Assembly: GCF_000143415.4 (NCBI RefSeq)
Contig: NW_003314285.1
Coordinates: forward strand, 1,871,471 to 1,935,470
Length of the DNA stretch: 64,000 nucleotides
DNA from: Selaginella moellendorffii
Taxonomy: Eukaryota > Plantae > Lycopodiophyta
Direction: 5' to 3'
Below, in pieces: positions 53,591 through 58,039 of the stretch. The position numbers were made by a program, and so were the translations under genes. The stretch's first letter is position 1; the number at the start of each line of letters is the position of its first letter. The notes under the pieces were generated by a model that worked only from the letters and a program-made list of their open reading frames with translations, was not told the DNA's origin and did not search any database.

Positions 53591-54842
53591 CCTATGTGAA
53601 ATTATTTGTTTACCTTTGAATCAATGGACATTTCAAATATATGTTTACGACTGTGAGAACGATCAGTACAAAAGAACTTGGCTGAGATTGGCATGGCATC
53701 CATAGCCCGTGCAAAACTTCTTGCCAATCAATTGCTAGCATCTGGTGATCGCCAGCCATGGCAAGTTCCAGCGCGTCTAGAAACCACTGCCTGGAGCTGC
53801 TCCACAATCTTGTGCATCCTGGACGCAGGGAATAGAATGGTTGAAGACATCAGGCATGCCCGTTGCCAAGATAGAGGAGTTCTTCACTCTCCTTCTGACA
53901 ATGGCGATGCACTGTGAATTGCTTCCCTACGAAATACCTTTACTCACCCTTCAACTAAATCTAGAATATTCTATTTGTGGATGTGAGAAATGTTCCAAGG
54001 GATCTGCAGTGAATTTTCAAGCAGCAAATCTTCATGTTAGAAATTTTGATGATCTACAGGTTTATTTATTTTCTGAAAAAGTAGAATAAAAATAATGACA
54101 CCATGTGTAACTTTTATTCCTGCGATGCTTACTGGGATTTATCCCACTCAGAGTTAGTAATAATGCAAGAGTTGGGGAATCTGGCAATTTTATTATGTTT
54201 TTATCGCCTTTTCAAAAAAGGCCCACAACCCTAAACACGACTCTATTATTCAATTGCTTTTAGTTATGTAAATCCCAGAATGTTCTCCATTAGATTCATG
54301 ATCATGTGGGAAATAAAAAGATCTTTTTTCCTAAACAAAGTTCTAGACTGAATGATTAACTCCATAAACCTTAGGTATTTTCAGTTTTCATTCATGCCTT
54401 ATGAAATGATTGTAGTTTTATATTCATTGATTCATGTGGGATATTGAATCCACCAATTAAAATAGACTTGTTTACAAACTTTTCACAATCTGGTCAATAG
54501 AAACACCCGTCTTCTTTCCAGCAATGCACTTGTGTCTAGATTTGATTCCTTTCACGTGAAGAAACCTTGAATATTTCTTGCCGTGATCATCAATACCTCC
54601 ACTTTAAACGGACAAGATCAATCGATTTAAAGGCCTTCTCTCATCTCTGGTACACATAAGCAGGAGCTACAGAGCCAAGGATACTTTTCCTTTTGTAATA
54701 TTCTTAGCTCTTTCAAGTGTTGCAATGTGGTTGGTCATGAAAAAATCTCTCTTCTTACAACTTTGGACTTGCAGCATTTATAAGGATTGCAAGCAAGCAT
54801 AGAAGTTCAGAGTTGGAAAAAGAAGTTTATAGAGGAGAGAGA

Positions 54843-56531
54843 ATGAAGAGTCTCGTCGCGTTTTTTCTTGTTCTTGCTGTGATCTCCCACTTTTGCAATG
54901 CGCAAGATTTGAGTTTCACAGCCACGACTCCCAGCCTCACCAAAGGCAAGCCAAACACCTTCATTGGAACCACTGGCGATCAGATCGCGTCGTCTCTTCT
55001 CGCATCAAAGACTCCCGCAATGCTTTGGGGCTCGGTTCCCGCGAGTGCAATCACCAACATCTGCCAGAAGATTGTCCAGACTGGAAGACAGGAGTACACT
55101 GCAAAGATAGATGGCGACTGGGGAGGATCCGAGACCCTCACGTTAAAGGTAGAGTCTAGATAAGTACCTTTGTTACGTTAATCTTTCTCTTGCTGACGAC
55201 TGGAAGCTATCTCTAGGTGGTCGCAACCGGTGGCTGTGGTGCCGCTCCAGATTCATCCGGAACGCAGTTCGTGTTCACAGACAACTATGGCCGCAAGAGT
55301 GCTGTAAGTTGAGTGATCATTTTGCAGCAACATAAATCACTGGATGCTTACCAGATTGTTTGCCCAAGCAACGCTGGAAGAACTGGCTGTGGTGTGTACA
55401 TGACCGGCAGTGACGTGGAAAGCCTCTACAAGAAGCGCTTGGAACTCGAGCAGCAACTACTGCTCACAAACTCTTCTGGCGATCACCAGGCAGCTCGAAG
55501 ATTCTTGCTTGGTGGCTGCAAAGAAGAAGCAGGGAAAGGTACCTCGGGGTGATCCATATGTTAGCTCGTTCCTTCCTTTTTGCAGGAGCAATCGGAGGTG
55601 CAATCACGGGAGTGTTGGGAACTGGAGGTTGCTTGGGACTGGGACCATTGGCACCTTTCTGCATCGCTGGCGTTTTGGGAGTGAGTGCTGAGCTTGGCGC
55701 GGCTGCTGGCTGCGTGAGTGCGTGCTTCCCTGGGGATGCAACGGTGCAAACTTCCACGGGCGAGACAAAGACGATGAGCCAGCTCCAAATCGGTGACAAG
55801 GTATCTATCCTGATCATCCATCGCTTCCACTAAACCGTTTTCCTCTGCTCGCGTCGTGAAGGTTGGGACGCTCAAGAACGGGAGGCTCGAGTTCGGTGAA
55901 ATCTATGCTTTCGGCCACCGAGACTTGGAGCAGAAGAGTGACTTCGTCAACCTGGAACTATCCCACTCAAAGACCCTTGAGCTCTCGCGCCTGCATTTCG
56001 TGCCAACGCTGCTCAAAGCTGGTGTGTGTCATCTCTTCCTTCCACCACTTTTTTTTCCACCAAGCTCACGAACCATTTCTAGGTGGAGTCGAATTCAAGC
56101 GTGCGCAAGACGTTCTTGTCGGAGATGTGTTGACCGCTTCATCGCCCACCAACAATTCGATCATGACTCCATTCCCAGTCACACGAATCTCGATCGTTAC
56201 AAAGCCCGGCCTCTATAATCCATTGACTCTCCAAGGAACTATCGTCGTCAACGGAGTCGCCGCCTCGGTCCACAGCGACTGGTTCCTGGATGCCCTGTTT
56301 GACGCGCTCGGCCTCACTGCTTACCTCCCAGCGGCATACCAGGCTATCCTCTTCCCGGCGCGATTGCTCTACACACTCCTCGGCCATGATTCATACCTCG
56401 CGCTCTACAAATGGATCGACGCCAGGATCAATGTCGCCGAGTTCGGCACTGAAAATGGCGGCAAGATTGCAGCGGCGGCGCTGCTCGCCAGTGGAATCGC
56501 GTCCCTGCGATTGCTCAAGAACCCTATGTGA
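54843..56531 (+). CDS. secreted Hedgehog-type Hint (Hog) domain autoprocessing precursor, 466 aa, 6 exons
   Basis: Exons 54843-55148, 55217-55303, 55355-55538, 55586-55800, 55862-56021 and 56083-56531 (all GT-AG, 1401 nt, open). Signal peptide, CFPGDATV...LQIGDKV, FGHRD, LELSRLH, VGDVL, GLYNPLTLQGTIVVNGVAAS, SRR-like ILFPARLLY. Confidence 0.9.
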
Positions 56532-58039
56532 AAGAGTACTGGTATTTGCTGCAACCTCATAGAATGGCTTGGAAACTGGATCTTAGCTTAAACGGAGAAT
56601 AAGAAATCATGTTAAAGCTTTCTTCTGACAGAATGATATAAATAAAATCTCAAAACAAGAAATAAGATCTATCTTGCAAATTAACAAGAGAAATAGTGCT
56701 TTAGAACGTGAGAAATCAGGTGCCAAAGTCTTAAACTTCAAACCACTAAGAAAGTACACAATTTGGACAAGGCTCTTGGTGCAAGGAAATATTTTTGGAT
56801 TAGATTACTCCCTCTAATCCGCCCTTTTGAGTAGTAGATCAAAGCATTTAACAATGGTGCTGGCCAACATTGGATATTATTGCTAAACAAACATCTTGGA
56901 ACTCAAAGTGAGTTATAAGTGGGTTTCAATTCCTATTTTAATATACACTATTATATTTTTATTTTGCAACTTAATAAAAAAATATAGATTTATAGGACTA
57001 CAAATTCTATTTTTATAATGAAAATGTTATTTATCAAAATTGTCATGAAAATACAAAATTTGTAATTCATGATGACTATTGCAAGCATTTTATGCACTCA
57101 ATATTGCAACAAATATATAATTGTATATGGGAGTATTATATATTTACACATATTTAGATATACTTTTTTTTTGAGTTTTATGCAAAAATATTATGCATAC
57201 AATTCCTTGTCAATTGTTATAAAAACAATTGAAACTTGACTAATAAAATATATTATATATACATGGAGTACAACACTTCAGAACATAAGACTAATACCAC
57301 ATCATCTAAAATAATATGATGTTATTATAAATTTAGTGAGAGTTTTTTTTCCTATTCTTATATCATTGTATGTAGATTTGTGATCTTGAGATTATTACCA
57401 TTTCTTTTGTATTCTATTTACCTCTCATTTCACATTGCTGTGTTTCATTTTCAATTATAACGCACTCTAATGTAAATATAGTATTTTGATTACTTTAGCA
57501 AGTACTTTTAATTACTTGCAGCTTGTTTATGGTGTGGTACTCTAATCTAAGTAGCAATTAATTGGAGTAGCAGCAAATACAGTCAATTGGAGCACATATG
57601 CAAGTGCAATGCTTTTTTTGGTGTTTGGGGCATTGAGTAAATAATTTGTATTATAGCCATGATAAGGTGTTAGTTTTATTGATTCTTTGTGTTCTTAATC
57701 ACACATATAAGTTTTTAATATTGCAGTGGTTTATTGAGTTTATATATATTGCAAAGTGCAATATAGAATTTTCTTTCTTAGGTTTTTACTTCTTAGTTTT
57801 AGCTATGTAATTATTACAATGATTGTGTCATGAAGAGCAAAGAGCATCATAACATACTTATAACACATGTAATGATAGGATAAGATTTAGATATGCTATC
57901 ACTATGAATTCTTAGAACTTTAGGGGATAAATGGGGATAAAATAGCTATTAAGGGCTATCTCATTAAACAATTACCCCTTTTTCAATTTAGTTAAAAGGA
58001 AGAGAAATAAAATGCATTATATATCTCATGGGAAATTAC

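What the first reader, a model, noticed from the sequence alone, without database searches (positions are those of the whole stretch)
55496..55725. Bacteriocin-like Gly-rich 4-Cys peptide framed by an RRFL/GG site and the Hint cysteine, possibly lipidated or cyclised
Seen: RRFLLGG-CKEEAGKGAIGGAITGVLGTGGCLGLGPLAPFCIAGVLGVSAELGAAAGCVSA-|CFPG. This is a 53-56 aa hydrophobic segment with GxxxG motifs, a central Pro turn and 4 Cys. Known: RRxL is the plant site-1 protease motif (the RALF in this window has RRLL), and GxxxG helical hairpins after a double-Gly are typical of class II bacteriocins/microcins. Inference: cleavage at both ends releases a membrane-active peptide carrying a Hint-installed C-terminal adduct. 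If trimming exposes the Cys after GG, it could attack the Hint thioester (native-chemical-ligation chemistry) and give a head-to-tail cyclic peptide, which would be a new kind of plant RiPP.
Basis: inference. Interest (0 to 1): 0.85.

Follow-up and report, generated by a model that had tools for sequence, protein, structure and literature searches.

The report
Glycine-zipper tail of spikemoss Hog precursor
The glycine-rich four-cysteine stretch is real and expressed, but it is a conserved tail of an already annotated plant Hedgehog-like self-cleaving protein, preceded by a conserved protease site; it is not a bacteriocin relative and is unlikely to become a cyclic peptide.

Summary
Observation confirmed. 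Window 55496-55725 (+) encodes residues 179-239 of a six-exon, 466-aa secreted protein. It is letter-identical to Selaginella moellendorffii XP_002974348.1 / D8RTU0 ("Hint domain-containing protein"), and contigs from four studies show it spliced and expressed.

The stretch is a conserved module of a green-lineage Hog (Hedgehog-type Hint) family found in ferns, mosses, a liverwort, Coleochaete and chlorophytes. Plant Hogs with a conserved upstream region were reported in 2008.

- **Supported:** [RK]-R-x-[LMV]-L is present in 12/12 core members and fits the plant S1P/SBT6.1 consensus. It sits in a low-confidence linker and is about 150-fold enriched there. The four Cys and a GxxxGxxxG zipper are conserved.
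- **Not supported:**
  - The "GG" before Cys1 is private to this copy (D in most members, GD in the allele and the paralogue).
  - No bacteriocin family matches.
  - The core is as conserved as the rest of the protein, not hypervariable.
  - Cys1 lies 2-13 residues after the site, so cleavage would not expose it, and ER Hint chemistry precedes Golgi S1P cleavage. Cyclisation is therefore unlikely.

Best reading (inferred): a probably disulfide-stapled helical tail receives the Hint-installed adduct, and the N-domain is clipped from it. The scan reported the same module before on the tandem paralogue just beyond this window.

The parts
54843..56531 (+). Whole gene. Six exons: 54843-55148, 55217-55303, 55355-55538, 55586-55800, 55862-56021, 56083-56531 (stop included). 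Product 466 aa = XP_002974348.1 / UniProt D8RTU0.
   Evidence: Model built. Identical to P0188. All introns spliced in contigs of 4 studies.
54843..54902 (+). Signal peptide, residues 1-20 (..HFCNA|QD).
   Evidence: Read from the sequence. Hydrophobic N-terminal helix 2-16 in the AF2 model. The cleavage position is inferred.
54903..55495 (+). N-domain of the cargo, residues 21-178 (includes introns 1 and 2). Alpha+beta fold with conserved Cys, no Pfam family.
   Evidence: Conserved at 0.51 mean identity. AF2 pLDDT about 80-85. No significant fold match; weak SRPBCC/lipocalin-like rows only.
55496..55510 (+). R179-R180-F181-L182-L183: conserved S1P/SBT6.1-type motif R-(R/K)-x-L.
   Evidence: 12/12 core members keep [RK]-R-x-[LMV]-L. 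15/19 members carry the consensus in the 30 aa before Cys1, about 150x denser than elsewhere. pLDDT is under 50. Consensus quoted from PMC7162652.
55517..55722 (+). Four-Cys Gly/Ala-rich helical module, residues 186-238 (C186, C208, C218, C235; zipper G193-G197-G201; turn GPLAPF 212-217). Interrupted by intron 3.
   Evidence: Conservation. Helices predicted at 187-205 and 209-231, or as one long helix 184-237.
55539..55585 (+). Intron 3 (47 nt, GT..AG) inside the Gly-rich segment.
   Evidence: The joint is seen in all four runs.
55723..55725 (+). Codon of catalytic Hint Cys239 (CFPG).
   Evidence: Invariant in 29 aligned sequences. Aligns with Cys1 of Drosophila HhC.
55723..56279 (+). Hint module, residues 239-383 (includes introns 4 and 5). 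His283 (55916-55918) sits at the general-base position D46, Ser306/His309 stand for TXXH, and Val380 sits at the C143 position.
   Evidence: Pfam PF01079. AF2 pLDDT about 90. Alignment to 6TYY and 1AT0.
56280..56450 (+). Conserved helical region after Hint, residues 384-440 (SDWFLD..LPAAYQ..), in the place of the sterol-recognition region.
   Evidence: Mean identity 0.52. Helices 387-432. The function is inferred.
56451..56528 (+). C-terminal hydrophobic helix followed by basic residues, residues 441-466. Possible membrane anchor of the Hog part.
   Evidence: Sequence. Helix 435-463. Low sequence conservation (0.22) but the same hydrophobic-then-basic character in homologues.

Best explanation
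The stretch is the C-terminal module of the cargo (N-product) of a Hedgehog-type Hog precursor of Selaginella moellendorffii.

Shown:
- The gene is expressed and spliced.
- It encodes a signal peptide, a conserved about 160-aa N-domain and a flexible linker with an invariant [RK]-R-x-[LMV]-L motif.
- These are followed by a 53-aa Gly/Ala-rich helical segment with four conserved Cys and a GxxxGxxxG zipper.
- Directly after it come the catalytic Cys of a Hint module, a conserved helical region and a hydrophobic C-terminal tail.

Inferred mechanism:
1. In the ER the Hint Cys239 forms a thioester with Ala238. A hydroxyl nucleophile, probably a membrane sterol or other lipid activated by His283, resolves it. 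The cargo then ends in an esterified Gly-zipper tail.
2. The four Cys form two disulfides (C208-C218 closing the GPLAPF turn, C186-C235 stapling the ends), giving a compact helical hairpin.
3. The adduct plus the small-residue hairpin hold the cargo at the membrane and perhaps drive self-association.
4. In the Golgi an S1P/SBT6.1-like subtilase cuts at RRFL|L. This separates the soluble N-domain (residues 21-182) from a 56-residue adducted tail peptide (183-238).

Which fragment is the active product is open. I favour the tail as an anchor and release device for the conserved N-domain.
For: - Gene model, identity and expression.
- Hint membership and catalytic Cys.
- Family-wide conservation of motif, Cys and Gly in Selaginella, Adiantum, Ceratodon, Physcomitrium, Marchantia, Coleochaete, Coccomyxa and others.
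- The motif matches the AtSBT6.1 preference R-(R/K)-X-L or R-(R/K)-L-X, and tandem sites occur as in CLEL6 (PMC7162652). Most homologues have a second R[RK]xL 6-10 aa later.
- The motif is about 150x enriched in the 30 aa before Cys1 and nearly absent elsewhere.
- The linker has pLDDT under 50 in both models, while the N-domain and Hint are confident.
- A RALF with RRLL in the same window shows this genome uses such sites.
- His at the D46 position resembles the D46H variant. The best PDB hit 6TYY carries His there, and D46H still autoprocesses in cells (PMC12054796).
- The N-domain is as conserved as the Hint, and it was found only together with Hint.
Against: - No biochemical data exist for any plant Hog. 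Cleavage at the Hint junction, the nature of the adduct and cleavage at RRxL are all untested.
- Val replaces C143, which is required for Hedgehog autoprocessing (PMC12054796), so the chemistry may differ or end in plain hydrolysis.
- AF2 gives the Gly-rich segment low confidence in the full-length model (under 50). It gives one long helix rather than a hairpin in the N-product model. Disulfide pairing is inferred only.
- Four of 19 members (Volvox, Myrmecia, two unnamed) lack a strict motif in the scanned window.
- The sequences are related, so the enrichment statistic is not a true probability.
Confidence: 0.5

Rival explanations
1. After both cuts, the 56-residue adducted Gly-zipper peptide is itself the bioactive product: a membrane-active antimicrobial or signalling lipopeptide. 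The N-domain then acts as a pro-domain.
For: The boxing between a conserved S1P-type site and the Hint Cys is real. A glycine zipper is present. Two homologues give weak sub-threshold Gly-zipper_Omp/OmpA matches (E=0.006 and 0.08). Other Hog precursors in the hit list carry very small or Cys-rich cargos, including a hevein-like one, so peptide cargo is a theme.
Against: The N-domain is more conserved than the peptide (0.51 against 0.43), which is unlike a pro-domain. The core is not hypervariable. No bacteriocin or antimicrobial-peptide family matches. Both helices have unfavourable Wimley-White insertion energies and carry charges in several homologues. I found no hairpin-only precursor with a signal peptide; the short ones look like truncated models.
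Confidence: 0.17
2. No cut at RRxLL. The basic-Leu-Leu motif and the four-Cys helices are a structural part of one intact N-product (hinge, oligomerisation stalk or docking element), or they serve the Hint reaction itself by presenting the scissile bond or controlling Cys239 through its redox state via nearby Cys235.
For: The AF2 full-length model puts 176-183 in a short helix. Plant Hogs lack C143, the partner of Cys1 in Hedgehog, so another Cys might take a redox role. The module evolves like a structural element.
Against: The motif matches a well-defined protease consensus, is often duplicated in tandem, lies in a variable-length low-confidence linker, and is otherwise nearly absent from these proteins. 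The distance from Cys235 to Cys239 varies from 2 to 9 residues, which argues against a fixed catalytic role.
Confidence: 0.25
3. The segment is a true two-pass transmembrane hairpin, which would make the precursor a polytopic membrane protein.
For: Kyte-Doolittle 19-residue maxima are 1.5-2.3. The nearest structural rows include Tim17/23-type and SlyB glycine-zipper membrane hairpins at Z about 6-7.
Against: Those Z values are below the tool's stated noise level for helical models. Wimley-White octanol sums are positive, +20 and +6.6 kcal/mol for the window protein. Helix 1 carries up to four charges, and the Cys-bounded helices are only 16-22 residues long. Cys208 and Cys218 would face the reducing cytosol, at odds with their invariance as a likely disulfide pair (inference).
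Confidence: 0.05
4. Head-to-tail cyclisation. An exposed N-terminal Cys186 attacks the Hint thioester and yields a cyclic peptide.
For: Only chemical feasibility: a thioester at Ala238 is expected from Hint chemistry, and a Cys lies near the upstream site in this copy.
Against: Cutting at RRFL|L leaves LGG before Cys186. In homologues 2-13 residues intervene. The GG is not conserved. Cys1 is shifted or absent in Coccomyxa and one Adiantum paralogue. Hedgehog-type autoprocessing takes place in the ER (PMC12054796), while SBT6.1 acts in the early Golgi (PMC7162652), so the thioester should be gone by then. A conserved post-Hint helical region argues for an external lipid nucleophile.
Confidence: 0.02

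Closest known systems
Plant/'moss' Hog proteins of Burglin 2008 (pPp Hog, pSm Hog, pSl Hog; PMC2362128)
   Same: Same family. It is a secreted protein with a Hog domain from S. moellendorffii and Physcomitrella. The paper already notes a conserved upstream region found in no other organism. The window protein is annotated in RefSeq/UniProt as a Hint domain-containing protein.
   Different: As far as the text I read shows, the paper does not describe the RRxLL site, the four-Cys glycine zipper or any processing model. I also find the architecture in ferns, a liverwort, Coleochaete and chlorophyte algae.
Animal Hedgehog and nematode Hog proteins (Hh, warthog, groundhog; HhC structures 1AT0, 6TYY)
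   Same: Signal peptide, then cargo, then Cys-initiated Hint, then a helical region. HMMER E about 1e-13 to Drosophila HhC. Cys1 and the His of TXXH are conserved.
   Different: The cargo is unrelated. His replaces the general base D46, Ser replaces T69 and Val replaces C143. There is an extra hydrophobic C-terminal tail. The residue before Cys1 is Ala/Ser/Gly rather than the fixed Gly.
Substrates of plant site-1 protease SBT6.1 (RALF23, CLEL6/GLV1, pectin methylesterases, bZIP17/28)
   Same: An R-(R/K)-x-L / R-(R/K)-L-x motif, often in tandem, in a variable linker of a secretory-pathway protein (PMC7162652).
   Different: No cleavage data exist for this protein. Here the downstream fragment would be a Cys-stapled hydrophobic tail with a Hint-made C-terminus. 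It would not be a small hormone peptide or an enzyme domain.
Bacterial glycine-zipper lipoproteins (Pfam Gly-zipper_Omp/OmpA, SlyB-type 2-helix hairpins)
   Same: A GxxxGxxxG small-residue helices-plus-lipid idea. There are weak sub-threshold HMM hits in two homologues. SlyB is among the nearest structural rows (Z 6.1, 22% identity).
   Different: Scores are below the family cut-offs, and there are none for the window protein. The lipid would be at the C-terminus and installed by Hint. The four conserved Cys are absent from those families. The resemblance is most likely analogy and composition.
Class II bacteriocins / microcins with double-glycine leaders
   Same: Gly-rich hydrophobic peptides of about 50 aa with GxxxG motifs.
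   Different: No family match (Bacteriocin_IIc 8 bits against a cut-off of 27). The GG is not conserved. This is a eukaryotic secretory precursor with no C39 peptidase logic.

Membership tests
Hedgehog-type Hog/Hint autoprocessing proteins (Pfam PF01079) | Hint module match above the Pfam gathering score | tested here: met
   Exon 6 alone scores 42.6 bits against a cut-off of 29.7. Full-length homologues score 67-92 bits.
Hedgehog-type Hog/Hint autoprocessing proteins (Pfam PF01079) | Catalytic Cys at the first Hint position (C-F motif), directly after the cargo | tested here: met
   Cys239-Phe240 is invariant in 29 sequences and aligns with Cys1 of 1AT0/6TYY.
Hedgehog-type Hog/Hint autoprocessing proteins (Pfam PF01079) | TXXH motif (T69, H72) | tested here: met
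   S306-R-L-H309. The His is nearly invariant, the family consensus is T-x-L-H, and this copy has Ser for Thr.
Hedgehog-type Hog/Hint autoprocessing proteins (Pfam PF01079) | Asp general base (D46) that activates the sterol hydroxyl | tested here: not met
   His283 stands at that position and is nearly invariant in the family. The engineered D46H Hedgehog still autoprocesses (PMC12054796), so activity is not excluded.
Hedgehog-type Hog/Hint autoprocessing proteins (Pfam PF01079) | Cys143 (branched-intermediate thioester) | tested here: not met
   Val380 aligns with C143. Burglin also notes loss of this Cys in moss and red-algal Hogs.
Hedgehog-type Hog/Hint autoprocessing proteins (Pfam PF01079) | Self-cleavage with transfer of the cargo to a sterol | not testable with these tools
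   Needs expression and mass spectrometry.
Substrates of plant S1P/SBT6.1 | R-(R/K)-X-L or R-(R/K)-L-X in an accessible luminal region | tested here: met
   RRFL 179-182. Present in 12/12 core members and 15/19 wider members. pLDDT under 50. Consensus from PMC7162652.
Substrates of plant S1P/SBT6.1 | Demonstrated cleavage dependent on the protease | not testable with these tools
   No proteomic evidence was found. A moss peptidome supplement holds no peptides of the Physcomitrium homologue.
Class II bacteriocins with double-glycine leader | Match to Bacteriocin_IIc or related family models | tested here: not met
   No hit for the window peptide. Two homologues score 8.1-8.7 bits against a cut-off of 27.1. 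NCBIfam gives nothing relevant.
Class II bacteriocins with double-glycine leader | Conserved Gly-Gly at the leader cleavage site | tested here: not met
   Position 185 is Gly in 2/12 and Asp in 6/12. The allelic and tandem copies have GD.
Pfam glycine-zipper families (Gly-zipper_Omp, _OmpA, _YMGG, Rick_17kDa_Anti) | HMM match above the gathering score | tested here: not met
   None for the window peptide. The Marchantia homologue scores 16.9 bits against 25, and the Adiantum homologue 13.2 against 27.
Pfam glycine-zipper families (Gly-zipper_Omp, _OmpA, _YMGG, Rick_17kDa_Anti) | GxxxGxxxG motif in a helix | tested here: met
   G193 and G197 are 12/12 and G201 is 8/12. The segment is predicted helical.
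Head-to-tail cyclic plant RiPPs | Core peptide whose N-terminal residue is exposed by the upstream cut; hypervariable core between conserved sites | tested here: not met
   2-13 residues lie between the motif and Cys1. Core identity is 0.43, similar to the rest of the protein.

The most novel reading that the evidence does not exclude
Green plants outside the seed plants, and some green algae, use a Hedgehog-type Hint domain together with a site-1-type subtilase to make a roughly 55-residue, disulfide-stapled glycine-zipper peptide. This peptide carries a C-terminal steryl (or other lipid) ester. It would be a eukaryotic, ribosomally made lipopeptide that acts in the membrane in its own right, through pore or oligomer formation, defence or signalling. 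That would be the first function assigned to any plant Hog protein.
Probability: 0.15. Interest if true: 0.85.

Novelty: new variant of a known kind. Interest (0 to 1): 0.5.

Why it matters
Hedgehog-type autoprocessing is textbook biology in animals, but no plant Hog protein has a known function or demonstrated chemistry. This work gives a concrete, testable processing model for a family conserved from chlorophyte algae to ferns. The model has a Hint-made C-terminal adduct on a glycine-zipper tail and a conserved site-1-protease-type cut that would separate that tail from a conserved N-domain. The family also carries a natural His at the general-base position, like the engineered D46H Hedgehog, and lacks C143. 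It is therefore a natural experiment on the Hedgehog mechanism. If the adduct is a phytosterol, this would be protein sterylation in plants. Moss and liverwort members make genetics feasible.

Tried and rejected
- **Bacteriocin or microcin kinship:** Pfam and NCBIfam scans of the isolated peptide and five homologous segments found nothing at or near threshold.
- **ESM Atlas feature searches** of residues 179-238 and 21-178 came back blank.
- **PDB sequence search** with the N-product profile gave only a chance-level MS2 coat match.
- **Fold of the N-domain:**
  - Foldseek/PDB had no row at E<=0.001; the best rows were weak SRPBCC/lipocalin matches (TM 0.2-0.28).
  - The Atlas gave TM<=0.37.
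  - VIA-wide gave Z<=6.9, within the stated noise for helical models.
- **Homology with a second pre-Hint module:** I compared the plant hairpin with a second four-Cys hydrophobic pre-Hint module found in other, unnamed Hog proteins. hhalign probability was 0.15%, so no detectable relation.
- **Classical two-pass membrane hairpin:** rejected on Wimley-White energies and charges.
- **Search for N-domain or hairpin relatives without Hint:** only Hint-bearing family members were found, though the search is word-limited.
- **Search for hairpin-only precursors:** the short candidates lack signal peptides and look truncated.
- **Moss peptidome supplements:** searched for peptides of the Physcomitrium homologue, none found.
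The two AF2 runs disagree on hairpin versus long helix.
Full report
**What is there.** Reading 54400-57400 and translating candidate exons gave a six-exon gene on the + strand. The exons are 54843-55148, 55217-55303, 55355-55538, 55586-55800, 55862-56021 and 56083-56531, encoding 466 aa.

The finding's coordinates run exactly from the codon of R179 (55496) to the codon of the Hint cysteine C239 (55723-55725). A 47-nt intron (55539-55585) lies inside the Gly-rich part. The quoted peptide is correct letter for letter.

The product has these parts:
- a signal peptide (1-20);
- an N-domain (21-178);
- RRFLL (179-183), then GG;
- Cys186, Cys208, Cys218 and Cys235 within a segment that is 45% Gly+Ala;
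- CFPG at 239.

Pfam finds the Hedgehog-type Hint module in exons 4-6 and nothing else.

**Identity, annotation, expression.** A HMMER scan of 1.8 billion representatives with exon 6 gave 586 Hog relatives. Cluster look-ups then showed that my model is letter-identical to P0188. This is XP_002974348.1 / EFJ24570.1 / UniProt D8RTU0, a "Hint domain-containing protein" of Selaginella moellendorffii.

A 468-aa tandem paralogue (LOC9658011, about 90% identical) lies on the same scaffold, and allelic copies lie on another scaffold. Contigs of four runs from four studies show all five introns removed with GT..AG ends. They also contain a variant that matches the paralogue, so both copies are transcribed.

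The earlier scan note s1-421927 describes the same module on the tandem paralogue just beyond this window and reached a similar verdict. I re-tested its points here.

- Adiantum (three proteins)
- Ceratodon (two proteins)
- Physcomitrium
- Marchantia paleacea
- Coleochaete scutata
- Coccomyxa
- Volvox africanus
- Myrmecia bisecta
- several unnamed transcriptome or metagenome proteins

Conservation in 12 core members:

| Position | Conservation |
|---|---|
| 179 | R/K, 12/12 |
| 180 | R, 12/12 |
| 182 | L/M/V, 12/12 |
| 183 | L, 12/12 |
| C186 | 11/12 |
| C208 | 12/12 |
| C218 | 12/12 |
| C235 | 11/12 |
| A190, G193, G197 | 12/12 |
| G201 | 8/12 |
| P216, G221, G230 | 11/12 |

The C3-C4 spacing is 16 in 13 of 15 members, while C1-C2 varies from 17 to 23.

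The allelic and tandem copies of this very gene read GD-C.

Mean pairwise identity of the hairpin is 0.43. That is close to the N-domain (0.51) and the Hint (0.49), so the core is not hypervariable.

**The RRxL site.** AtSBT6.1/S1P prefers R-(R/K)-X-L or R-(R/K)-L-X, and CLEL6 carries two such sites in tandem (PMC7162652).
- That consensus occurs in the 30 residues before Cys1 in 15 of 19 family members.
- Most members have a second copy 6-10 residues downstream.
- It occurs only three times in the remaining ~8,800 residues of these proteins, roughly a 150-fold enrichment. The sequences are related, so the binomial figure is not a true probability.
- Both AF2 models give this linker pLDDT under 50, between a confident N-domain and the rest.
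- The window also holds a canonical RALF with RRLL.

The site-1 reading is therefore well supported as a hypothesis, but no cleavage has been observed.

**The Gly-rich segment.**
- AF2 predicts helices in both runs. The full-length model gives 187-205 and 209-231 at low confidence. The N-product model gives one helix 184-237 at pLDDT 60-81. These disagree on whether there is a turn.
- The invariant Cys208/Cys218 flank the conserved G-P-x-A-P-F stretch, and C186/C235 lie at the ends. To me this argues for a hairpin with two disulfides, but that is inference.
- Wimley-White sums are unfavourable for membrane insertion (+20 and +6.6 kcal/mol), and several homologues have acidic residues in helix 1. 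A classical two-pass membrane hairpin is therefore unlikely.
- No bacteriocin, antimicrobial or glycine-zipper family reaches threshold. The window peptide has no hit at all. Two homologues give sub-threshold Gly-zipper hits and 8-bit Bacteriocin_IIc rows.
- Structural neighbours (Tim23/Mgr2-type hairpins, SlyB, long single helices) score Z<=6.9, within the stated noise.

**The Hint chemistry.** The Hint part aligns over 143 residues with Drosophila HhC. The best PDB hit is 6TYY, whose sequence has His where wild-type 1AT0 has Asp46. The window protein compares with Hedgehog as follows:

| Hedgehog residue | Window protein |
|---|---|
| D46 (general base) | His283, nearly invariant in the family |
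| T69 / H72 (TXXH) | Ser306 / His309 |
| C143 | Val380 |

In Hedgehog, D46 activates cholesterol, D46H still autoprocesses, and C143 is required (PMC12054796). A conserved helical region (384-440) follows the Hint, then a hydrophobic, basic-ended tail.

An adduct on Ala238 is thus plausible by homology, but its nature, and even the cleavage itself, is untested. The mechanism must differ in detail from Hedgehog.

**Cyclisation.**
- A cut at RRFL|L leaves LGG before Cys186. In homologues 2-13 residues intervene.
- Cys1 is shifted or missing in two members.
- Hint processing is an ER event, while SBT6.1 acts in the early Golgi.

I rate this reading at about 2%.

**Prior knowledge.** Burglin (2008, PMC2362128) reported Hog proteins in S. 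moellendorffii, S. lepidophylla and Physcomitrella. He noted a conserved upstream region not found elsewhere and the loss of the motif-J cysteine. I found no later functional work on plant Hogs in the library. No peptides of the moss homologue appear in a moss peptidome supplement.

**Verdict.**
- The stretch is a conserved cargo-tail module of a known, annotated Hog family.
- The S1P-type boxing is real and conserved.
- The bacteriocin/double-glycine analogy and the cyclisation idea are not supported.

My preferred mechanism is a Hint-adducted, probably disulfide-stapled glycine-zipper tail that anchors the cargo, from which the N-domain is clipped. I hold it at about 0.5. The free bioactive lipopeptide stands at about 0.15-0.17.

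Noticed in passing
window 25798-26205 (-): A canonical RALF precursor with an RRLL site followed by YISY and four Cys (Pfam RALF E=1.8e-23).
   Followed up: partly
P0043, P0052, P0054, P0062, P0071, P0079, P0098, P0103, P0104, P0116, P0126 (representative hits): A different conserved four-Cys hydrophobic helical module (..LPCLPLALLAWLEGGTSFFxCMxxC....LVKDCLW..) sits directly before the Hint Cys. The host proteins are long Hog proteins from unnamed metagenome or transcriptome sources. hhalign finds no relation to the plant hairpin (probability 0.15%). A Cys-stapled hydrophobic tail before Hint may have arisen more than once.
   Followed up: partly
P0018, P0013, P0015/P0186, P0022: Other Hog precursors carry very different small cargos. 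These are a hevein-like Cys-rich domain, a cargo of only about 5 residues after the signal peptide, a Pro-rich extensin-like stretch (a Selaginella protein), and a small Cys-rich peptide. Hog looks like a general C-terminal processing module for small secreted cargos.
   Followed up: no
window 55916-55918 (His283) and residue 380 (Val): A natural His sits at the Hedgehog general-base position D46, and the best PDB match is the His-46 variant 6TYY. Val sits at the C143 position. Both hold across the family.
   Followed up: partly
window 56451-56528: The precursor ends in a hydrophobic helix followed by basic residues. Its sequence is poorly conserved but its character is kept in homologues. It may be a membrane anchor that holds the Hog part, and the active site, at the membrane. 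Animal Hedgehog has no such tail.
   Followed up: no
window 54903-55495 (N-domain): The conserved N-domain has no Pfam family and no significant fold match. The weak top Foldseek rows are all hydrophobic-ligand folds (SRPBCC/Bet v 1-like, lipocalins) at TM 0.2-0.28.
   Followed up: partly
P0001 = EFJ16220.1 SELMODRAFT_421866: A third Selaginella copy is annotated as a 349-aa protein with several internal gaps relative to this gene and Tyr in place of Cys208. It is either a mis-modelled gene or a decaying copy.
   Followed up: no
window 55149-55216 and 55385-55539: One contig (run X7) runs through intron 1 unspliced. Other contigs carry 4-6 differences, or a 30-letter replacement that encodes IVCPNNAKKS, which is the paralogue's sequence. 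So the tandem paralogue is expressed in the same samples.
   Followed up: partly
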